NCBI GenBank assembly: GCA_965240325.2 | Contig: OZ251222.1 | Coordinates: 2,790,001 to 2,854,000, forward strand | Source: Rebecca billardiae RCC1528 | Lineage: Eukaryota > Protista > Haptophyta | Direction of reading: 5' to 3' | DNA: 64,000 nucleotides | Shown here: positions 2,819 through 14,833 of the stretch, one piece after another | Layout: each line of letters starts with the position of its first letter | Numbering within the stretch: position 1 is the stretch's first letter | Made by a program: the position numbers and the translations under genes | Notes under the pieces: model-generated | The model's input: the letters and a program-made list of their open reading frames with translations, nothing else | Database searches by the model: none | Told to the model about the DNA's origin: nothing

Positions 2819-2978
2819 TAATATGGGCCATATGTCGTCTTGCACGTACGTACTCAAATTGCTCACGGCCGTGGGGCGCCCGTCACCCGTGCGCTCAGAA
2901 CGGCATTGCTATCATCATCATCATCATCATTGTCATATGTATTATTGATGCAGTCATCGACATCGTCAGTCTCAGGAA

Positions 2979-5900
2979 TCAGGACGCAGCGCTTTGGTAG
3001 AGGCGTGGCCCACCTATGGCGGCAATGTCGTCAAGCCGCCGTTTGCGTTCCCGCCGGGCCAGCAGCACGGCAACCGCCGCCAAGCCCAAGCAGCAGCACA
3101 ACACGACGACTCCCACGACGATGCCGGCCACGCCACCGGCTCCGAGCTCACTGTTGAGGCCCCCGACAATGCCGCCGTTGCCGCCATCGTCGTCATCGTC
3201 GTCATCATCGTCATCGTCGTCATCGCCGCTGCTCCCACTGTCACTCGAACTGCCACTCGATGAGCCGGAGGTAGCTGTGCCGTCATCCTGCACGATCGGG
3301 TCGTACCACGCTGACGAGCTGAACTTGTCGAAGCGCAGCGTAATCACATACTTGGTGGAGCCGGAGAGGGCAAGTTGGGGATAGCCAGTCGGCATCGTCG
3401 CCCAGGCACCATCCAGCTTCGCCACGTTCGAGACCACCATCGCTGCGCCGTTGCCCAGCGAGTATGTGTTGTTCGCAATCGGCGTCAGATCGAGCGTCTC
3501 GCCAGCCTTGGACGTCACCTCGATGCCGACGTCCAAGAAGTCGCCGACGCCGCCCTGGCACGGATTGCCGCTCTCGCCAGCGCAGAACGGCCAGTTGAGG
3601 ACCTGCGGGCGCAGGCGCAGGCGCAGGCGCAGGGCGCGTGACACGGCTCAGCTCTGCGCACCACACAAGTCATAGTCGCACGCGCAGGCGCAAACACACC
3701 TCGACGTTGAACTTGAGCGTGCCGGTGGTCACTGTGTACGACTCAGACGGCGTGGGCGTGATCGTGCCATTCTCTGAGAAGATCAGCGCAGTGATGCGCA
3801 GGTCCGCCGCGTCGTTGACCAGCTTCACCGTGAAGTCGATGGCATTCGCCGCCACGCCAGACACGTTCGTGGCGTACATGGAACCAAACGTGAAGTCCGT
3901 GTTCGCAAACGTGTTGCGCGAGTGCTTGCCGTCGTTCGGACCGGACTGGCCCACGCGGTCGCCGTTCGAGGCGCGCTCGGTGATGCTCGACATCGTCACC
4001 TGCACCTTGTCGTCGTCCGACGCATCCGACGAGCCATACACCATCTTGCCAGACTGACCGAGGATCTGGACGGTGTTCACCGGCTCCGACGAGTCCACAG
4101 GTGTCGGGGGAGTGAGCTGCTGAGTGGTGGGTGATGGCGGCGGCGGCGAGCTTGGCGGTGGAGGTGGGGGTGGCGGACTAGGCGGCGGACTCGGCGAGGG
4201 CGATGGAGGCGGCGGGCTCGGCGGCGGGACCGGTGGCGCCCCAACCTCCTCTACAATATCCTGTACGATGGGGTCGTACAGCGCGGACGCGCTGAACTTG
4301 TCGAAGCGCAGCGTCAGCTCGTACTTGGATGAGCCAGACAGCGACAGCTCCGGGTAGCCAGACGGCATCGTCGTCCACGTGCCGTCCAACCGAGCAGCGT
4401 CCGACACGATCAGCTCGGCGCCGTCACCGAGCGAGTACTTGTTCGCCTCGATCGGCGTGAGGCTGAGGCTCTCACCTCCCTTGGATTTGATCTCAATGCC
4501 GATGTCGAGGAACTCGCCAGTCTCGCCCTTGCACGGGTTGCCGCTCTCGCCAGCGCAGAACGGCCAGTTCAGCACCTGCACGCGCAAGCGCGTCGACACG
4601 CATGCACGCGGCGCGCGGGGTGAGACACGGGTCAGTCAGGGCGCACACGTACGCACCGTGCAAACGCGCATGCTCGGGGCGCGCACCTCGACGTTGAACT
4701 TGAGCGTGCCCTCGCTCACGTTGTACGCCTCCGAAGGGGTCGGGTAGATCGTGCCGCTCTCCGTGAAGATCAGCGCAGTGATGCGCAGGTCAGCGGTGTC
4801 GTCGACCAGCTTCACATCAAAGTCGATGGCGCTCGCCGCCACGCCGGAGACGTTGGTGGCATACACGCTGCCGAATGTGAAGTCCGTGTTCGCAAACGTG
4901 TTGCGCGAGTGCTTGCCGTCGTTCGGACCAGACTGGCCGACAGTGTCGCCGTTCGAGGCGCGCTCGGTGATGCTCGACATCGTCACCTGCACCTTGTCGT
5001 CGTCCGAGCCACCCGAGGTGCCGTACACCATCTTGCCAGAGCGGCCCAGGATGCGCACCCTGTAGTCGGAGGAAGACAGGTCACGCTCGTCACCAGATGG
5101 CGACGGTGGTGGTGGGCTGGGCGGGGGCACAGGCGGCGGCGGTGGGCTCGGAGGCGGGCTCGGTGGCGGCGGTGGCGGCGGCGGGCTGGGCGGCGGGCTC
5201 GGCGGCGGCGGGGGAGGCGGCGGGCTCGGCGGTGGGCTGGGCGGCGGTGGTGGCGGCGGCGGGCTCGGCGGCGGGGTCGGCGGCGTGCTCGCAGTGCCCA
5301 CGTCCTGCACGATGGGGTCGTACAGCGCGGACGCGCTGAACTTGTCGAAGCGCAGCGTCAGCTCGTACTTGGATGAGCCAGACAGCGACAGCTCCGGGTA
5401 GCCAGACGGCATCGTCGTCCACGTGCCGTCCAGCCGAGCAGCGTCCGACACGATCAGCTCGGCGCCCTCACCGAGCGAGTACTTGTTCGCCTCGATCGGC
5501 GTGAGGCTGAGGCTCTCACCTCCTTTGGACTTGATCTCAATGCCGATGTCGAGGAACTCGCCAGTCTCGCCCTTGCACGGGTTGCCGCTCTCGCCAGCGC
5601 AGAACGGCCAGTTCAGCACCTGCACGCGCAAGCGCGTCGACACGCATGCACACGGCGCGCGGGGTGAGACACTGGTCAGTCAGGGCGCACACGTACGCAC
5701 CGTGCGGGCGCGCATGCTCGGGGCGCGCACCTCGACGTTGAACTTGAGCGTGCCCTCGCTCACGTTGTACGCCTCCGAAGGGGTCGGGTAGATCGTGCCG
5801 CTCTCCGTGAAGATCAGCGCAGTGATGCGCAGGTCAGCGGTGTCGTCGACCAGCTTCACATCAAAGTCGATGGCGCTCGCCGCCACGCCGGAGACGTTGG

Positions 5901-8900
5901 TGGCATACACGCTGCCGAATGTGAAGTCCGTGTTCGCAAACGTGTTGCGCGAGTGCTTGCCGTCGTTCGGACCAGACTGGCCGACAGTGTCGCCGTTCGA
6001 GGCGCGCTCGGTGATGCTCGACATCGTCACCTGCACCTTGTCGTCGTCCGAGCCACCCGAGGTGCCGTACACCATCTTGCCGGAGCGGCCCAGGATGCGC
6101 ACCCTGTAGTCGGAGGAAGACAGGTCACGCTCGTCACCAGATGGCGACGGTGGTGGTGGGCTGGGCGGGGGCACAGGCGGCGGCGGTGGGCTCGGAGGCG
6201 GGCTCGGTGGCGGCGGTGGCGGCGGCGGGCTGGGCGGCGGGCTCGGCGGCGGCGGGGGAGGCGGCGGGCTCGGCGGTGGGCTGGGCGGCGGTGGTGGCGG
6301 CGGCGGGCTCGGCGGCGGGGTCGGCGGCGTGCTCGCAGTGCCCACGTCCTGCACAATGGGGTCGTACAGCGCGGACGCGCTGAACTTGTCGAAGCGCAGC
6401 GTCAGCTCGTACTTGGATGAGCCAGACAGCGACAGCTCCGGGTAGCCAGACGGCATCGTCGTCCACGTGCCGTCCAACCGAGCAGCGTCCGACACGATCA
6501 GCTCGGCGCCCTCACCGAGCGAGTACTTGTTCGCCTCGATCGGCGTGAGGCTGAGGCTCTCGTTGCCCTTCGACTTCACCTCGATGCCAATGTCGAGGAA
6601 CTCGCCAGTCTCGCCCTGGCACGGGTTGCCGCTCTCGCCAGCGCAGAACGGCCAGTTCAGCACCTGCACGCGCAAGCGCGTCGACACGCATGCACGCACG
6701 CGGCGCGCGGGGTGAGACACTGGTCAGTCAGGGCGCACACGTACGCACCGTGCAAACGCGCATGCTCGGGGCGCGCACCTCGACGTTGAACTTGAGCGTG
6801 CCCTCGCTCACGTTGTACGCCTCCGACGGGGTCGGGTAGATCGTGCCGCTCTCCGTGAAGATCAGCGCAGTGATGCGCAGGTCAGCGGTGTCGTCGACCA
6901 GCTTCACATCAAAGTCGATGGCGCTCGCGTTCACGCCGGACACGTTCGTGGCGTACACCTCGCCGAACGTGAAGTCCGTGCTCGCAAACGTGTTGCGCGA
7001 GTGCTTGCCGTCGTTCGGACCGGACTGGCCCACGCGGTCGCCGTTCGAGGCGCGCTCGGTGATGCTCGACATCGTCACCTGCACCTTGTCGTCGTCCGAG
7101 CCACCCGAGGTGCCGTACACCATCTTGCCAGAGCGGCCCAAGACGCGCACGTTGAACTCGGACGCCGAAAGCGCACGGTCGTCCACCGGAGACGGCGGCG
7201 GCGGCGGCGGGCTCGGCGGCGGGCTCGGCGGCGGCGGCGGTGGCGGGATCGGTGGCGGGCTCGGCGGAGGTGGTGGTGGGGCCGGCGGCGGAGGGCTCGG
7301 CGGCGGGGTCGGCGGCGTGCTCGCAGTGCCCACGTCCTGCACGACCGGGTCGTACAGCGCGGACGCGCTGAACTTGTCGAAGCGCAGCGTCAGCTCGTAC
7401 TTGGATGAGCCAGACAGCGACAGCTCCGGGTAGCCAGACGGCATCGTCGTCCACGTGCCGTCCAGCCGAGCAGCGTCCGACACGATCAGCTCGGCGCCCT
7501 CACCGAGCGAGTACTTGTTCGCCTCGATCGGCGTGAGGCTGAGGCTCTCGTTGCCCTTCGACTTCACCTCGATGCCAATGTCGAGGAACTCGCCAGTCTC
7601 GCCCTGGCACGGGTTGCCGCTCTCGCCAGCGCAGAACGGCCAGTTCAGCACCTGCACGCGCAAGCGCGTCGACACGCATGCACGCGGCGCGCGGGGTGAG
7701 ACACGGGTCAGTCAGGGCGCACACCTACGCACCGTGCGGGCGCGCATGCTCGGGGCGCGCACCTCGACGTTGAACTTGAGCGTGCCCTCGCTCACGTTGT
7801 ACGCCTCCGAAGGGGTCGGGTAGATCGTGCCGCTCTCAGTAAAGATCAGCGCAGTGATGCGCAGGTCAGCGGTGTCGTCGACCAGCTTCACATCAAAGTC
7901 GATGGCGCTTGCCGCCACGCCGGACACGTTCGTGGCGTACACCTCGCCGAGCGTGAAGTCCGTGCTCGCAAACGTGTTGCGCGAGTGCTTGCCGTCGTTC
8001 GGACCGGACTGGCCCACGCGGTCGCCGTTCGAGGCGCGCTCGGTGATGCTCGACATCGTCACCTGCACCTTGTCGTCGTCCGAGCCACCCGAGGTGCCGT
8101 ACACCATCTTGCCAGAGCGGCCCAAGACGCGCACGTTGAACTCGGACGCCGAAAGCGCACGGTCGTCCACCGGAGACGGCGGCGGCGGCGGCGGGCTCGG
8201 CGGCGGGCTCGGCGGCGGCGGCGGTGGCGGGCTCGGTGGCGGGCTCGGCGGAGGTGGTGGTGGGGCCGGCGGCGGCGGGCTCGGCGGCGGGGTCGGCGGC
8301 GTGCTCGCAGTGCCCACGTCCTGCACGACCGGGTCGTACAGCGCGGACGCGCTGAACTTGTCGAAGCGCAGCGTCAGCTCGTACTTGGATGAGCCAGACA
8401 GCGACAGCTCCGGGTAGCCAGACGGCATCGTCGTCCACGTGCCGTCCAGCCGAGCAGCGTCCGACACGATCAGCTCGGCGCCCTCACCGAGCGAGTACTT
8501 GTTCGCCTCGATCGGCGTGAGGCTGAGGCTCTCGTTGCCCTTCGACTTCACCTCGATGCCAATGTCGAGGAACTCGCCAGTCTCGCCCTGGCACGGGTTG
8601 CCGCTCTCGCCAGCGCAGAACGGCCAGTTCAGCACCTGCACGCGCAAGCGCGTCGACACGCATGCACGCGGCGCGCGGGGTTAGACACTGGTCAGTCAGG
8701 GCGCACACGTACGCACCGTGCGGGCGCGCATGCTCGGGGCGCGCACCTCGACGTTGAACTTGAGCGTGCCCTCGCTCACGTTGTACGCCTCCGAAGGGGT
8801 CGGGTAGATCGTGCCGCTCTCCGTGAAGATCAGCGCAGTGATGCGCAGGTCAGCGGTGTCGTCGACCAGCTTCACATCAAAGTCGATGGCGCTCGCGTTC

Positions 8901-11900
8901 ACGCCGGACACGTTCGTGGCGTACACCTCGCCGAACGTGAAGTCCGTGCTCGCAAACGTGTTGCGCGAGTGCTTGCCGTCGTTCGGACCGGACTGGCCCA
9001 CGCGGTCGCCGTTCGAGGCGCGCTCGGTGATGCTCGACATCGTCACCTGCACCTTGTCGTCGTCCGAGCCACCCGAGGTGCCGTACACCATCTTGCCAGA
9101 GCGGCCCAAGACGCGCACGTTGAACTCGGACGCCGAAAGCGCACGGTCGTCCACCGGAGACGGCGGCGGCGGCGGCGGGCTCGGCGGCGGGCTCGGCGGC
9201 GGCGGCGGCGGCGGGCTCGGTGGCGGGCTCGGCGGAGGTGGTGGTGGGGCCGGCGGCGGCGGGCTCGGCGGCGGGGTCGGCGGCGTGCTCGCAGTGCCCA
9301 CGTCCTGCACGACCGGGTCGTACAGCGCGGACGCGCTGAACTTGTCGAAGCGCAGCGTCAGCTCGTACTTGGATGAGCCAGACAGCGACAGCTCCGGGTA
9401 GCCAGACGGCATCGTCGTCCACGTGCCGTCCAGCCGAGCAGCGTCCGACACGATCAGCTCGGCGCCCTCACCGAGCGAGTACTTGTTCGCCTCGATCGGC
9501 GTGAGGCTGAGGCTCTCGTTGCCCTTCGACTTCACCTCGATGCCAATGTCGAGGAACTCGCCAGTCTCGCCCTGGCACGGGTTGCCGCTCTCGCCAGCGC
9601 AGAACGGCCAGTTCAGCACCTGCACGCGCAAGCGCGTCGACACGCATGCACGCGGCGCGCGGGGTTAGACACTGGTCAGTCAGGGCGCACACGTACGCAC
9701 CGTGCGGGCGCGCATGCTCGGGGCGCGCACCTCGACGTTGAACTTGAGCGTGCCCTCGCTCACGTTGTACGCCTCCGAAGGGGTCGGGTAGATCGTGCCG
9801 CTCTCCGTGAAGATCAGCGCAGTGATGCGCAGGTCAGCGGTGTCGTCGACCAGCTTCACATCAAAGTCGATGGCGCTCGCGTTCACGCCGGACACGTTCG
9901 TGGCGTACACCTCGCCGAACGTGAAGTCCGTGCTCGCAAACGTGTTGCGCGAGTGCTTGCCGTCGTTCGGACCGGACTGGCCCACGCGGTCGCCGTTCGA
10001 GGCGCGCTCGGTGATGCTCGACATCGTCACCTGCACCTTGTCGTCGTCCGAGCCACCCGAGGTGCCGTACACCATCTTGCCAGAGCGGCCCAAGACGCGC
10101 ACGTTGAACTCGGACGCCGAAAGCGCACGGTCGTCCACCGGAGACGGCGGCGGCGGCGGCGGGCTCGGCGGCGGGCTCGGCGGCGGCGGCGGCGGCGGGC
10201 TCGGTGGCGGGCTCGGCGGAGGTGGTGGTGGGGCCGGCGGCGGCAGGCTCGGCGGCGGGGTCGGCGGCGTGCTCGCAGTGCCCACGTCCTGCACGACCGG
10301 GTCGTACAGCGCGGACGCGCTGAACTTGTCGAAGCGCAGCGTCAGCTCGTACTTGGATGAGCCAGACAGCGACAGCTCCGGGTAGCCAGACGGCATCGTC
10401 GTCCACGTGCCGTCCAGCCGAGCAGCGTCCGACACGATCAGCTCGGCGCCCTCACCGAGCGAGTACTTGTTCGCCTCGATCGGCGTGAGGCTGAGGCTCT
10501 CGTTGCCCTTCGACTTCACCTCGATGCCGATGTCGAGGAACTCGCCAGTCTCGCCCTTGCACGGGTTGCCGCTCTCGCCAGCGCAGAACGGCCAGTTCAG
10601 CACCTGCACGCGCAAGCGCGTCGACACGCATGCACGCGGCGCGCGGGGTGAGACACTGGTCAGTCAGGGCGCACACGTACGCACCGTGCGGGCGCGCATG
10701 CTCGGGGCGCGCACCTCGACGTTGAACTTGAGCGTGCCCTCGCTCACGTTGTACGCCTCCGAAGGGGTCGGGTAGATCGTGCCGCTCTCCGTGAAGATCA
10801 GCGCAGTGATGCGCAGGTCAGCGGTGTCGTCGACCAGCTTCACATCAAAGTCGATGGCGCTCGCGTTCACGCCGGACACGTTCGTGGCGTACACCTCGCC
10901 GAACGTGAAGTCCGTGCTCGCAAACGTGTTGCGCGAGTGCTTGCCGTCGTTCGGACCGGACTGGCCCACGCGGTCGCCGTTCGAGGCGCGCTCGGTGATG
11001 CTCGACATCGTCACCTGCACCTTGTCGTCGTCCGAGCCACCCGAGGTGCCGTACACCATCTTGCCAGAGCGGCCCAAGACGCGCACGTTGAACTCGGACG
11101 CCGAAAGCGCACGGTCGTCCACCGGAGACGGCGGCGGCGGCGGCGGGCTCGGCGGCGGGCTCGGCGGCGGCGGCGGCGGCGGGCTCGGTGGCGGGCTCGG
11201 CGGAGGTGGTGGTGGGGCCGGCGGCGGCAGGCTCGGCGGCGGGGTCGGCGGCGTGCTCGCAGTGCCCACGTCCTGCACGACCGGGTCGTACAGCGCGGAC
11301 GCGCTGAACTTGTCGAAGCGCAGCGTCAGCTCGTACTTGGATGAGCCAGACAGCGACAGCTCCGGGTAGCCAGACGGCATCGTCGTCCACGTGCCGTCCA
11401 GCCGAGCAGCGTCCGACACGATCAGCTCGGCGCCCTCACCGAGCGAGTACTTGTTCGCCTCGATCGGCGTGAGGCTGAGGCTCTCGTTGCCCTTCGACTT
11501 CACCTCGATGCCGATGTCGAGGAACTCGCCAGTCTCGCCCTTGCACGGGTTGCCGCTCTCGCCAGCGCAGAACGGCCAGTTCAGCACCTGCACGCGCAAG
11601 CGCGTCGACACGCATGCACGCGGCGCGCGGGGTGAGACACTGGTCAGTCAGGGCGCACACGTACGCACCGTGCGGGCGCGCATGCTCGGGGCGCGCACCT
11701 CGACGTTGAACTTGAGCGTGCCCTCGCTCACGTTGTACGCCTCCGAAGGGGTCGGGTAGATCGTGCCGCTCTCCGTGAAGATCAGCGCAGTGATGCGCAG
11801 GTCAGCGGTGTCGTCGACCAGCTTCACATCAAAGTCGATGGCGCTCGCGTTCACGCCGGACACGTTCGTGGCGTACACCTCGCCGAACGTGAAGTCCGTG

Positions 11901-12154
11901 CTCGCAAACGTGTTGCGCGAGTGCTTGCCGTCGTTCGGACCGGACTGGCCCACGCGGTCGCCGTTCGAGGCGCGCTCGGTGATGCTCGACATCGTCACCT
12001 GCACCTTGTCGTCGTCCGAGCCACCCGAGGTGCCGTACACCATCTTGCCAGACTGCCCGAGGACTCGGACGCTGAGCTCTGACGAGGACAGTTCGCGCTC
12101 ATCCGCCGCTGCGAGCGCAGCCAAGGCCGCTACGACGAGGGCAGCACATCTCAT
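2979..12154 (-). CDS. Giant type-I membrane protein (~2728 aa): signal peptide, 9 tandem SAARP/CARP4-like domains, Ser-Pro linkers, poly-Asp stalk, TM helix, short tail
   Basis: Start MRCAALVVAALAALAAA at 12154. Nine phase-0 GT-AG introns: 11588-11698, 10604-10714, 9620-9730, 8636-8746, 7652-7762, 6664-6778, 5620-5730, 4576-4686, 3603-3699. Splicing joins GTLKFNVE|VLNWPFC and gives 8187 nt, divisible by 3. C-terminus has D13, then GVAGIVVGVVVLCCCLGLAAVAVLLA, then RRERKRR. Confidence 0.9.
3290..12110 (-). repeat. Intragenic tandem array of nine ~1-kb units (domain, intron and Pro-rich linker)
   Basis: Intron donor spacing is 984 bp five times, then 1048, 1044 and 987; near-identical sequence including eight of the nine introns. 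Confidence 0.97.
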
Positions 12155-12818: not shown

Positions 12819-14833
12819 TCAGTTGTTGCTCAAAGCTGTCGCCGAGACGAAGCTGCCGACGCATCGCACGGCGTCTGTGCACGTGCGGAGGTGCTCGAGC
12901 GTCTGCTTGAGCCCCTCTTCGCTCGAGTGGCCGCCACATTCGGCAAAGAAGCACACCTCTGTGCCACCGCCCATCGGGTCCGGGTACGGGTGAATGTTCT
13001 CGACGTTGACGCCGCGCTGCGTGAACACCTCGAGCACGCGCGCGAGGGTGCCCGCGGTGTGAGGCACCTGGAAATAGAGCAGGCTCCGGTCCTGGGACGG
13101 GGCAGGGGCGCGGCGCGGGGGGAGGGGGGCTTGAGAGGCGGGTGCGGCGGCACACGCGAGGCGATCGTCTTCGCGCGCGCGCGCACCATCCCCGTGGCGA
13201 GCGCCTGCGGCGAGGACGAGACGACCAGGAATCGTGAGAAGGCGTAGGCGGGGCGGGGCACATTCTCCGCGAGCACGGTCGCGCTGAGCGCCTCCGCGTC
13301 GACGCGCGAGCACAGGACGGCCGCCTGCGTGGCGGGGCGGCGCGCGGCGCGCGGTCGTGCCGGCGTGGCTGAGCGCATGTGCAGCGCGGCCTGCGCGCGG
13401 CGCTGGGCTGGTGCACGCGAGACCGGGCGCGGGACGGGTGGCGGCCGAGGGCGAGCGCGTGCCGCTGCCTCACCGTGGCGTCGGCGAGCACGTCGGCCGC
13501 AGCCGCGTGCGCGGGCAGCCCCGCCACCTGCGCCTCGGGCACGGTGGACGACAGCCACTCCTCCAGGTGGGCGAGGCGCGGCAGTGGGCCGTACACCTTG
13601 CGCACCGCGGACAGCGGCCCGGCCGACCTGCTCACCAGCAGCAGCGGCTCGTCGGCCACGAGCACGTCCGCGCACACGTGCAGCTCGGCGGTGGCGAGCC
13701 GGTGGAACGTGGGTACGTCCAGCACGCCCATCGCGTCGGTGAGGGGCACGACGGCGTAGCGCGCCTGAGGGCGGGCGGCGTGGAGTCGGCGGCCGGTCAG
13801 CGCCGCGTGGGGGGGAGGGAAGCGCGCGCACGCGCGCGAGACGACGCGCAGCCGCGCCGCGCGCAGAGGGCCGCGCGCGCTCGGAGCGCCGCGCGCACAC
13901 CTTCCCCGAGAGCACCGTCGCGAGCGCGGCCGAGACGCCGGTGCACGGCACGTGCGTCACGGCCTGCGCCAGGCCGGGCGCGGGGGCTTTGGAGCTGAAG
14001 TGCGCCTCGGCGGCGCGGCGGCTGCGCGCGTCCGCGTGCGCCACGTGGCATCCGCCCAGCCGCTCGAGCAGGTACAGCACCTCGACTTCCTTGGTGAGCG
14101 GGATGATGTGGTCGCGGTACAGCGCCACAATCAGCTCGGGGTCGACCTTGTACGCGGGCTGCGTGGAGCGCTCGCCGGGGGCGCCCTCGATGTCCTGGCC
14201 GTACGCCGACGCCTTCGCGTGCACGCGCCGCAGCAGCTTCGCCTCCACCGCCGCGTTGGTGAGCAGCTCCATGATGCCGTCCGCGTCGCGCGCCTGTATC
14301 AGCCGCGTGTACTCTTCGGGCTGCGAGCGGAACTTGGACTCGGCGACGAACTTGCCGTAGTGGATGCGCTTCGACAGAGCCTGGAGCACGGTGATGTCGC
14401 AGAGCGTCGCAGAGCCGTACTGCGTGTCGTCGCCTGGCGGGCACACCGACGGCACGATGCGCGTGAGGTAGATCGCCTTGATCTGGTCGTTGACGTTGAT
14501 TGCGTTCGGATGGAGCACGACCGAGGTGGGGAGCGTGTCGAGGGACGGCGCGGGCAGCTTGGAGGGGAAGAAGGCGTGCTCCTCGGGCGCGGTGTAACGC
14601 CGCACGCTCGCGTGCAGCCGCTCGTGCTCGAGCAGCATGTGGTCGAGGAACGTGCGCACCGAGTCGTTCAGCACCTTGGTGAACGCCGGGTGGTTGAGCT
14701 CGGAGGTGGCGGCGTTTTGGCAGAACTGCGCGCGCTCAATTAGCGCGAAGATGATCGTCTCTTCCTGGCGGATGAGCGACGAGCGGATCTGGTCGAGGTC
14801 GAGCATGCCGCTGCCGTCACCTGGGGAAGGCAT
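12819..14833 (-). CDS. Eukaryote-type (Aro7/AroQ) chorismate mutase fused to a divergent prephenate dehydratase and ACT domain
   Basis: CM motifs IRSSLIRQEETIIFALIERAQF, RRYTAPEEHAFF, LQALSKRIHYGKFVAESKF, IIPLTKEVEVLYLL. Introns 13765-13900, 13325-13473 and 13092-13186 link in frame to PDT-like (YAVVP, SRFLVV) and ACT (AGTLARVLEVFTQRGVNV) regions. An in-frame stop lies just upstream of ATG 14833. Confidence 0.88.

What the first reader, a model, noticed from the sequence alone, without database searches (positions are those of the whole stretch)
2979..12154. Cell-surface protein built from nine coral-skeleton SAARP/CARP-like domains in an alga
Seen: a signal peptide, nine ~240-aa domains with a conserved Cys pair (WPFCAGESGNPC) and N-glycosylation sequons, SPPPP linkers, D13, a TM helix and a short tail. 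From memory, the domain tracks coral skeletal aspartic acid-rich proteins (Acropora SAARP1/acidic SOMP, Stylophora CARP4/5) along its whole length: VRVLGQSGKM, SITE...GDRVG, KHS..TF...F.F, LIF.E.GTI, GTLKFNVEVLNWPFC, GEFLD..I..KSK, MP.GYP, LRF.KF....YDP. Coral SAARPs have a single domain. Inference: this is a multivalent, extended glycoprotein for scale or matrix scaffolding or Ca2+ binding. It could point to a pre-biomineralisation role for the SAARP fold, especially if the host does not calcify.
Basis: partly seen in the sequence, partly recalled or inferred. Interest (0 to 1): 0.9.

Follow-up and report, generated by a model that had tools for sequence, protein, structure and literature searches.

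The report
Nine-domain SAARP-like algal surface protein
A haptophyte alga that probably does not calcify encodes a 2,728-residue membrane-anchored glycoprotein made of nine copies of the beta-sandwich domain at the core of the coral skeleton's acidic proteins, so this domain is a widespread eukaryotic surface module rather than an animal biomineralisation invention.

Summary
A minus-strand gene (12154..2979) has ten exons and nine GT..AG introns. It encodes a signal peptide, nine ~240-aa domains, eight Pro/Ser-rich linkers, a D13 run, one TM helix and a short tail.

The recalled SAARP/CARP likeness is real. A profile of the algal domain finds 493 protein clusters. These include Actinia "skeletal aspartic acid-rich protein 2-like" (E 3e-27) and the oyster protein XP_011442506 (E 5e-25). 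Takeuchi et al. 2016 align that oyster protein with Acropora SAARP1-3, acidic SOMP and Stylophora CARP4/5.

The alga lacks the family's acidic hallmark. It has no Asp-rich inserts inside the domain, so it resembles the non-acidic homologues.

No Pfam model covers the domain. A confident model of a 43%-identical homologue is a galactose-mutarotase-like supersandwich. Its closest solved structure is the lysosomal glycoprotein GLMP (Z 16.9).

The nearest labelled relative is a transcript from the pavlovophyte Exanthemachrysis. Labelled animal members form a separate clade.

The function is inferred: an extended, glycosylated surface or matrix scaffold. No RNA data were available.

First readers of this scan also noted a six-domain and a three-domain paralogue elsewhere in this genome. 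I did not test those.

The parts
2979..12154 (-). Whole coding region: 10 exons and 9 introns, giving a 2,728-aa type I membrane glycoprotein
   Evidence: Gene model built from the ORFs and the sequence. Nine family-HMM hits in the spliced product.
11699..12154 (-). Exon 1: signal peptide (nt 12154-12104, aa 1-17) and the N-half of domain 1
   Evidence: The sequence has a hydrophobic h-region followed by AAA|DE.
10715..11587 (-). Exon 2: C-half of domain 1, a 61-aa Pro/Ser linker and the N-half of domain 2. It is the first of five ~984-bp tandem units that are 98.5-99.9% identical, introns included.
9731..10603 (-). Exon 3: C-half of domain 2, linker, N-half of domain 3
8747..9619 (-). Exon 4: C-half of domain 3, linker, N-half of domain 4
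7763..8635 (-). Exon 5: C-half of domain 4, linker, N-half of domain 5
6779..7651 (-). Exon 6: C-half of domain 5, linker, N-half of domain 6
5731..6663 (-). Exon 7: C-half of domain 6, a longer 81-aa linker and the N-half of domain 7. It belongs to a 1,044-bp unit that is 98.2% identical to the next unit.
4687..5619 (-). Exon 8: C-half of domain 7, an 81-aa linker, N-half of domain 8
3700..4575 (-). Exon 9: C-half of domain 8, a 62-aa linker and the N-half of the divergent membrane-proximal domain 9, which is 78% identical to the other domains
2979..3602 (-). Exon 10: C-half of domain 9, a Ser/Gly-rich stretch, D13 (nt 3224-3186), a TM helix (nt 3134-3057), a 25-aa basic cytoplasmic tail and the stop codon (2981-2979)
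11588..11698 (-). Intron 1 (111 nt, GT..AG, with an in-frame TGA). Near-identical introns lie at 10604-10714, 9620-9730, 8636-8746, 7652-7762, 6664-6778 (115 nt), 5620-5730 and 4576-4686. A divergent 97-nt intron lies at 3603-3699.
   Evidence: The spliced junction KFNVE|VLNWPFC aligns without a gap to a transcript-derived homologue from Exanthemachrysis, which reads KFNIEVDNWPFC.

Best explanation
This is an intact nuclear gene of a GC-rich haptophyte, probably a pavlovophyte. It encodes a type I membrane glycoprotein whose ectodomain is a string of nine beads on stiff spacers.

Shown:
- Each bead is a ~240-residue all-beta supersandwich with one conserved Cys pair.
- The bead is homologous to the non-acidic core domain of coral SAARP1-3, CARP4/5 and acidic SOMP, and to their non-acidic relatives in sea anemones, jellyfish and bivalves.
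- The array arose inside this gene by recent tandem duplication of a unit made of half-domain, linker, half-domain and intron.

Inferred:
- The protein is anchored in the plasma membrane or a secretory-compartment membrane. Fully stretched, it could reach on the order of 200 nm.
- It is heavily N-glycosylated, and probably O-glycosylated on the Ser-Pro rods.
- It presents nine equivalent ligand-binding faces. The ligand is most likely a glycan or another component of the cell covering. This guess rests on the fold, which is that of GLMP and of the non-catalytic domains of many glycosidases and polysaccharide lyases.
- It would therefore act as a multivalent scaffold, adhesion or protective-coat protein of the cell surface.
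- The D13 run next to the membrane gives some low-affinity cation binding. The protein is not a mineral-nucleating acidic protein of the coral kind.
For: - Gene model and anatomy.
- Nine family-HMM hits at i-E about 1e-73 each.
- Family size: 493 homologous clusters at E<=1e-3 and 258 at E<=1e-10.
- Named members: Actinia 'skeletal aspartic acid-rich protein 2-like', C. gigas 'skeletal aspartic acid-rich protein 2' XP_011442506, Mytilus, Potamilus, Saccostrea, Dreissena, Sanderia and Symbiodinium.
- Full-length BLASTP alignments at 30-40% identity.
- XP_011442506 is aligned with SAARP1-3, acidic SOMP and CARP4/5 in S21 Fig of PMC4890752.
- Structure: an AF2 model of homologue P0029 (43% identical to domain 1) has pLDDT 88. 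Its best solved match is the GLMP luminal domain 6nyq_C at Z 16.9, rmsd 3.1 A over 217 residues. Galactose-mutarotase-like domains follow at Z 11-12.8.
- About 40% of the complete relatives fetched also end in a hydrophobic C-terminal segment. Adi-SAARP2 and Adi-SAARP3 have C-terminal TM domains.
- The window's domains form one clade (support 100) inside a clade that holds an Exanthemachrysis gayraliae transcript.
- The tandem units are 98.5-99.9% identical, introns included.
Against: - No expression data: no RNA run was listed, and the reads laid were two short DNA-like contigs.
- Neither a ligand nor a location has been shown.
- The structure was predicted for a homologue, not for the window's own domain. 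An intron splits each domain, so no reference exists for a whole one.
- A shared fold does not show carbohydrate binding; GLMP itself acts through protein contacts.
- The copy number of near-identical 984-bp repeats could be mis-assembled.
- The host's identity and non-calcifying habit rest on the nearest labelled relative and on unchecked notes of this scan.
Confidence: 0.6

Rival explanations
1. It is a calcium or mineral-handling matrix protein. The mildly acidic domains (pI 4.4, 14% D+E) and the D13 run would concentrate Ca2+ or control mineral or scale deposition. This would be the function proposed for coral SAARPs and CARPs.
For: - Homology to the SAARP/CARP4 core.
- Domain pI of 4.4 and D+E of 14.3%, close to the 14.5% / pI<4.5 cut-off used for 'acidic' coral skeletal proteins.
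- The D13 run.
- A short acidic loop (SDDD) sits where coral SAARP1 carries its first Asp-rich insert. This is a by-eye comparison.
Against: - The Asp-rich inserts held to be responsible for mineral interaction are absent.
- Published work treats the acidic regions as a coral-specific addition to a non-acidic domain that is also present in non-calcifiers.
- The nearest labelled relative is a pavlovophyte, a group not known to calcify (general knowledge).
- The family is large and occurs in many non-mineralising contexts.
Confidence: 0.12
2. It has a GLMP-like role. The membrane-proximal domain together with the TM helix would pair with a polytopic membrane transporter, or would form a protease-resistant glycan shield. 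The eight distal domains would be a later extension of that shield.
For: - The GLMP luminal domain is the best structural match. It stands about 4 Z units above all others: Z 16.9 against 12.8 or less.
- The topology is the same: signal peptide, one glycosylated supersandwich, a C-terminal TM helix and a short tail.
- GLMP is the accessory subunit of the transporter MFSD1.
- Domain 9 is the oldest and most divergent copy.
Against: - No sequence-level link: none of the 55 relatives hits any Pfam family consistently, and a profile search of PDB sequences does not find GLMP.
- GLMP has a single domain and lies close to the membrane, whereas this protein puts eight domains on long rods far from it.
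- No partner gene is evident.
Confidence: 0.15
3. It is a silent or mis-assembled tandem array: a gene relic, or an assembly artefact that inflates the repeat number, with no full-length product.
For: - No transcript evidence could be obtained.
- The units are up to 99.9% identical, a situation in which assemblers err.
Against: - All ten exons are open and in phase.
- All nine splice sites are canonical and identically placed.
- The two Cys and the family's conserved motifs are intact in all nine copies.
- The units differ by scattered substitutions and fall into three length classes, as expected of a real array.
- Relatives are transcribed in other protists, as MMETSP transcripts show.
Confidence: 0.05

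Closest known systems
Coral SAARP1/2/3, acidic SOMP (Acropora) and CARP4/5 (Stylophora)
   Same: - The core domain is the same from end to end. The shared motifs are GxSGK, KHS..F, G.E/GT.KFN, W.FC...C, GE(F/Y)LD..I..KSK, MP.G(F/Y)P and (R)F.KF....(Y)DP.
- Both are secreted.
- Some members (SAARP2, SAARP3) also have a C-terminal TM anchor.
- The coral core is predicted to be a beta-sandwich.
   Different: - Coral proteins have one domain, interrupted by two long Asp-rich inserts (about 20% Asp), and are occluded in aragonite.
- The alga has nine uninterrupted domains (7% Asp), Pro/Ser rods between them, and a single D13 run outside the domains.
Non-acidic SAARP-like proteins of non-calcifying cnidarians and of bivalves (for example C. 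gigas XP_011442506, Actinia XP_031565543, and the two-domain proteins of Mytilus, Saccostrea, Potamilus and Dreissena)
   Same: - The domains are uninterrupted and non-acidic.
- Identity to the algal domain is 31-41% over 243-256 aa.
- They are secreted.
- Two-domain tandem forms exist.
   Different: - They have one or two domains with short linkers, against nine on long polyproline rods.
- They are animal proteins, against a haptophyte one, and they sit in a separate clade of the tree.
- Their function is also unknown.
GLMP (glycosylated lysosomal membrane protein, PDB 6NYQ / 8R8Q)
   Same: - It is the best solved structural match: Z 16.9, rmsd 3.1 A over 217 residues.
- Both are type I membrane proteins with a heavily N-glycosylated supersandwich next to a single TM helix.
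   Different: - Identity is 12%, and no sequence or profile signal links them.
- GLMP has a single domain, is lysosomal and works as the partner of MFSD1.
Galactose-mutarotase-like supersandwich domains of glycoside hydrolases, phosphorylases and polysaccharide lyases
   Same: Same fold class: Z 11-12.8 over 170-190 residues.
   Different: Those domains are accessory parts of enzymes. There is no catalytic domain here and no sequence similarity.
Hydroxyproline-rich glycoprotein / extensin-type Ser-Pro rods
   Same: 42 SPPP+ motifs in eight 61-81-aa linkers that are 50-63% Pro.
   Different: The linkers lack the Tyr cross-linking motifs of extensins, with only two Tyr in all linkers. Hydroxylation and glycosylation were not tested.

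Membership tests
SAARP/CARP4-5/acidic SOMP conserved-domain family (broad sense, including non-acidic homologues) | Significant full-length similarity to the conserved non-acidic region defined in Takeuchi et al. 2016, S21 Fig | tested here: met
   - The profile from the window hits P0076/P0177 (XP_011442506, a row of S21 Fig) at E 4.8e-25 and Actinia SAARP2-like at E 3.4e-27.
- BLASTP gives 34% identity over 245 aa and 32% over 243 aa.
- The reverse HMM hits nine domains at about 1e-73 each.
- A direct alignment to a coral SAARP was not run, because its sequence exists only as text in a supplement. By eye, the motifs match along the whole domain.
SAARP/CARP4-5/acidic SOMP conserved-domain family (broad sense, including non-acidic homologues) | Conserved W.FC...C cysteine pair and a secretory signal | tested here: met
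   There are two Cys per domain in all nine copies. These positions are nearly invariant among 55 relatives. A signal peptide is present.
Coral acidic skeletal proteins in the strict sense (SAARP/CARP) | Two Asp-rich regions intercalated in the domain, with overall Asp about 20% (CARPs: more than 28% D+E) | tested here: not met
   Asp is 7.4% in the domain and 6.9% in the whole protein. D+E is 14% in the domains. There is no intradomain acidic insert, and the only run is D13 outside the domains.
Coral acidic skeletal proteins in the strict sense (SAARP/CARP) | Occlusion in, or action on, a CaCO3 biomineral | not testable with these tools
   This needs proteomics and biochemistry. The nearest labelled relative is from a pavlovophyte. 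That pavlovophytes do not calcify is general knowledge, not tested here.
GLMP / NCU-G1 family | Sequence or profile membership (Pfam NCU-G1) | tested here: not met
   The window's pieces and the 55 relatives give no such Pfam hit. A profile search of PDB sequences does not find GLMP.
GLMP / NCU-G1 family | Luminal or extracellular supersandwich fold next to a single TM helix | tested here: met
   6nyq_C matches at Z 16.9, rmsd 3.1 A over 217 residues, and 8r8q_B matches including the TM helix. This was done on the model of a 43%-identical homologue, not on the window's own domain.
Extensin-type HRGP | Ser-Pro(3-5) repeats together with Tyr cross-linking motifs | tested here: inconclusive
   SPPP+ motifs are abundant (42), but the linkers hold only two Tyr. 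Hydroxylation is not testable here.

The most novel reading that the evidence does not exclude
The SAARP/CARP4 core may be an ancient, pan-eukaryotic, GLMP-related supersandwich surface module that predates animals. In non-calcifying haptophytes it would be multiplied on polyproline rods as a glycan-binding scaffold of the organic cell covering. Corals would later have turned the same module into a mineral-binding protein by expanding two surface loops into poly-Asp inserts. One of those loops already carries a short SDDD patch in the alga.
Probability: 0.3. Interest if true: 0.7.

Novelty: new variant of a known kind. Interest (0 to 1): 0.55.

Why it matters
The papers I could read place the origin of the SAARP/CARP core in non-calcifying anthozoans or 'a metazoan ancestor'. 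In the searchable library I found no report of it outside animals.

This gene and its relatives add four points:
- The domain is a large family without a Pfam model. It occurs in haptophytes and dinoflagellates as well as in animals.
- Its fold is the GLMP / galactose-mutarotase-like supersandwich, not an Ig or FN3 sandwich.
- The coral acidic regions are loop insertions into an old extracellular module.
- A culturable alga offers a nine-fold, acid-free version of the domain in which its original function can be studied.

For algal biology, the gene is a candidate major surface or scale-associated glycoprotein.

Tried and rejected
- Pfam scans of the exon translations gave nothing significant. 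Across 55 relatives no family recurred; a single member gave a weak hit to ComC_SSD, a supersandwich domain.
- Sequence and profile searches of PDB chains returned only linker noise and chance hits.
- Word-indexed protein search with the C-half of the domain found nothing. With the family alignment it was swamped by candidates (21 hits). With the Actinia protein it gave 5 hits and no coral entry. Real coral SAARP/CARP sequences were therefore never obtained as tool objects.
- The direct alga-to-coral alignment was left out, because the coral sequence exists only as text in a supplement and long strings may not be typed. The link rests on XP_011442506 being in the published alignment and on NCBI's names.
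- ESM Atlas search by features gave no usable hit.
- Atlas search by shape gave unnamed archaeal clusters at TM 0.55-0.60 and GH65-type N-terminal domains. This is fold-level similarity only.
- RNA evidence: no RNA run was listed. Laying the one holder gave two short, low-depth contigs, one of which covers part of intron 1, so it is DNA-like and says nothing about splicing.
- The acid-richest hits were looked up in the hope of finding corals, but none carried a name.
- Further paralogues in this window: none. Only the nine domains of this gene match.
- One broad paper search was badly framed and gave nothing useful.
- The second structure job was not used. An intron splits every domain of the window and the tools take no read-through of a stop, so a whole domain of the window has no reference.
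Full report
**1. What is in the sequence**

ORF listing on the minus strand between 2979 and 12184 shows ten long ORF pieces. Each ends in ..GTLKFNVEV followed by a short junk tail and a stop. Each next piece resumes, after a junk start, with ..VLNWPFCAGESGNPC...

Reading the DNA gives a canonical GT directly after ..AAC GTC GAG and an AG directly before GTG CTG AAC TGG. A script that joins these sites yields one open frame from the ATG at 12154 to a stop ending at 2979. It has ten exons and nine introns of 111, 111, 111, 111, 111, 115, 111, 111 and 97 nt, and the product is 2,728 aa.

The eight 111/115-nt introns carry the in-frame TGA that ends each ORF piece, and the 115- and 97-nt introns would also shift the frame, so a continuous product needs splicing.

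The product has these parts:
- a signal peptide, aa 1-17;
- nine domains, whose 230-aa cores each have exactly two Cys and 2-4 N-X-S/T sequons (30 sequons in total);
- eight linkers of 61-81 aa that are 50-63% Pro, with 42 SPPP+ motifs;
- a Ser/Gly stretch and a D13 run at aa 2648-2660;
- a 26-residue TM helix at aa 2678-2703;
- a 25-residue basic tail.

**2. The array is young**

Domains 1-6 are 98-100% identical to each other. Domains 7 and 8 are 99.6% identical to each other and about 96% to the first six. The membrane-proximal domain 9 is only 78% identical to the rest.

At the DNA level the repeating unit is half-domain, linker, half-domain and intron. It is 984 bp long (988 and 1,044 bp in variants) and 98.5-99.9% identical among units 2-6, introns included.

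In a tree of the family, the window's domains form one clade with support 100. The multiplication therefore happened inside this gene, by tandem duplication or homogenisation.

**3. Is it a SAARP/CARP-like domain?**

Pfam and PDB sequence searches were blank, and the word-indexed protein search found nothing.

I then built an alignment in which the Pro-rich linker columns fall out of the profile (A1). I searched 1.84 billion cluster representatives with HMMER. The result was 493 clusters at E<=1e-3, 258 at E<=1e-10 and 35 at E<=1e-30.

Most hits are ~300-aa secreted proteins with one domain. Exact look-ups gave names for some:
- P0058 is 'skeletal aspartic acid-rich protein 2-like' of the sea anemone Actinia tenebrosa (E 3.4e-27).
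- The P0076 cluster holds 'skeletal aspartic acid-rich protein 2' of Crassostrea gigas, XP_011442506 (E 4.8e-25).
- P0003, P0004, P0006 and P0151 are two-domain proteins of Mytilus, Potamilus, Saccostrea and Dreissena.
- P0005 is from the jellyfish Sanderia.
- P0164 is from Symbiodinium microadriaticum.

BLASTP of the spliced domain 1 aligns end to end:

| Target | Identity | Aligned length |
|---|---|---|
| Mytilus | 40% | 247 aa |
| XP_011442506 | 34% | 245 aa |
| Actinia | 32% | 243 aa |
| Symbiodinium | 30% | 244 aa |

A natural-order HMM built only from 55 foreign relatives (A2) finds nine full domains in the spliced protein, at i-E 1e-72 to 1e-78.

The link to the coral proteins proper comes from the literature. 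Takeuchi et al. [quoted passage not shown] Their S21 Fig aligns Adi/Ami SAARP1-3, acidic SOMP and Spi CARP4/5 with, among others, Cgi_011442506. That is the very protein my profile hit.

The Adi-SAARP1 sequence printed in their supplementary table shows, by eye, the same motifs in the same order as the algal domain. The motifs run G.GK.....HS..SF, G.ETF.V..GTVKFNI..SNW.FC, GEYLD.NIKFKSK, MPFGFP and KF....IDP.

I could not run this last alignment with a tool, because the coral sequence has no reference. It is therefore the one inferred link in the chain.

**4. What it is not**

SAARPs and CARPs are defined as acidic. They have about 20% Asp, or more than 28% D+E, with two Asp-rich regions intercalated between non-acidic regions.

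The algal domains have 7.4% Asp and 14% D+E, with pI 4.4 and no internal acidic insert. The only acidic run is D13, outside the domains and next to the membrane.

The protein therefore belongs with the non-acidic homologues. These are the 'NS' clades of Conci et al. 2019, who argue like Takeuchi et al. that the acidic regions are a secondary, coral-specific addition. By eye, coral acidic region 1 sits in the loop where the alga has ..SGGSDDDK.., and region 2 sits in the loop after ..KSKG...

**5. Fold**

An AlphaFold2 model of P0029, built with the 55-row alignment, is confident: mean pLDDT 88, with the core above 95. P0029 is 43% identical to domain 1 over 250 aa. The model is all-beta with about 20 strands, and it has a signal peptide and a C-terminal helix.

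Structure searches gave the following:
- Foldseek's best solved matches are GLMP, in 8r8q_B and 6nyq_C, at E about 4e-5 and probability 1.00.
- VIA-align gives the GLMP luminal domain Z 16.9, rmsd 3.1 A over 217 residues. This is about 4 Z units above the next group.
- The next group, at Z 11-12.8, is the galactose-mutarotase-like supersandwich domains of GH97, GH38, GH65 and GH94 enzymes, polysaccharide lyases, aldose epimerases, copper amine oxidase and YidC.

The GLMP paper itself describes that domain as a beta-sandwich similar to a domain of cellodextrin phosphorylase.

A 2026 preprint describes the CARP4/SAARP1 core as a 5+7-stranded sandwich 'resembling Ig or FN3'. My result places the family more precisely in the supersandwich class, with GLMP as the closest solved structure.

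No sequence or profile signal to GLMP was found, so homology with GLMP remains open.

**6. Distribution and host**

In the FastTree tree of 182 domains, the window's clade lies within an 18-row clade with support 97. That clade contains two MMETSP transcripts and metagenomic proteins. One of the transcripts is from MMETSP1464, which is Exanthemachrysis gayraliae RCC1523. I take this to be a pavlovophyte haptophyte, from my own knowledge.

All labelled animal sequences except one Dreissena domain fall in a separate 46-row clade. The tree is unrooted and most rows are unlabelled, so it shows cohesion of groups, not direction.

Earlier notes of this scan call the genome a very GC-rich pavlovophyte related to Diacronema. 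Those notes are unchecked, but my nearest labelled relative is consistent with them. Pavlovophytes are not known to calcify (general knowledge).

Among the 232 family proteins fetched, 192 have one domain, 38 have two, one has three and this one has nine. Fragmentary metagenomic gene models could hide longer ones. First readers noted a six-domain and a three-domain paralogue elsewhere in this genome, which I did not test.

**7. Expression**

No RNA run could be listed for either end of the gene. The one run that holds part of the 5' end gave two short, low-depth contigs, one of which includes intron sequence, so it is DNA-like.

Support for the splice model is therefore comparative:
- The nine sites are identical and canonical.
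- The frame is intact only after splicing.
- The junction KFNVE|VLNWPFC matches, without a gap, transcript-derived and animal homologues such as KFNIEVDNWPFC in Exanthemachrysis.

**8. How it most likely works**

Shown: a type I membrane topology, nine equivalent supersandwich modules, rigid Pro-rich spacers, many sequons, and one poly-Asp run near the membrane.

Inferred: the protein is an extended, heavily glycosylated 'beads on a string'. Taking 3.1 A per residue for polyproline II, the 529 linker residues give about 160 nm, and the nine ~5-nm domains bring the total to roughly 200 nm.

It would display nine copies of one binding surface. The supersandwich fold is used as a glycan-contacting or protein-docking accessory domain in glycosidases, in lyases and in GLMP. 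Many family members are membrane-anchored or secreted. The most economical reading is therefore a multivalent scaffold, adhesion or coat protein of the cell covering.

Rivals are a Ca2+ or mineral-handling role, a GLMP-like transporter-partner or shield role, and a silent or mis-assembled array. They are listed with their tests.

**9. Novelty**

The domain family and its presence in non-calcifying cnidarians and in bivalves are published. Its presence outside animals, its supersandwich / GLMP-like fold and a nine-fold polyproline-spaced architecture were not found in the searchable literature. That library is incomplete.

I rate this a new variant of a known kind, of moderate to good interest. 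It moves the origin of a flagship coral 'biomineralisation' domain outside animals and offers an acid-free model for studying its ancestral function. However, the function here is still unknown and expression is unproven.

Noticed in passing
Model m310a761fd96d (homologue P0029) against PDB 6nyq_C / 8r8q_B: The SAARP-type domain's closest solved structure is the luminal domain of the lysosomal glycoprotein GLMP (Z 16.9, about 4 units above all other supersandwich domains). Both also share the topology of signal peptide, sandwich and TM helix. This may be a remote superfamily link, which I did not find mentioned in the papers read.
   Followed up: partly
P0162 (436 aa) and P0107 (420 aa), hits: Some relatives fuse the SAARP-like domain to other modules. 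P0162 carries a precomputed PF01079 hit (Hint, the hedgehog-type autoprocessing domain). P0107 carries PF00200 (disintegrin). This suggests the domain is a shuffled extracellular module in protists.
   Followed up: no
ESM Atlas fold search: The nearest Atlas shapes (TM 0.55-0.60 over 200-222 residues) are unnamed protein clusters of Bathyarchaeota and Thorarchaeota. They have no Pfam family, and whether they are related is unknown.
   Followed up: no
L001:131-1138 (JGI metagenome contig) and L002: One well-supported subclade of the family (P0155-P0163 and neighbours) is known only from metagenome contigs. The one gene whose DNA was fetched (P0161) is a single uninterrupted reading frame. The organisms behind this subclade were not identified.
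   Followed up: partly
window 2895-2945: A short (GAT/ATC)n microsatellite lies just downstream of the stop codon, in the presumed 3' UTR.
   Followed up: no
window 12830-14833 (minus strand): The upstream neighbour is a long ORF that another first-reader note calls a chorismate mutase fused to a degenerate prephenate dehydratase-ACT. It lies about 700 bp from this gene's start and shows no evident functional link.
   Followed up: no
P0191 (UniRef K1QJ08, Magallana gigas, 1,072 aa): A public oyster gene model named '60S ribosomal protein L26' contains two SAARP-like domains. It is probably a fused or mis-named gene model.
   Followed up: no
same genome, other windows (notes s1-350585, s1-360743, s1-360692): First readers report a six-domain and a three-domain SAARP-like gene, and another agent reports a giant Ser-Pro-rod surface protein. 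Surface proteins built from modules on polyproline rods therefore seem to be a theme of this genome.
   Followed up: no
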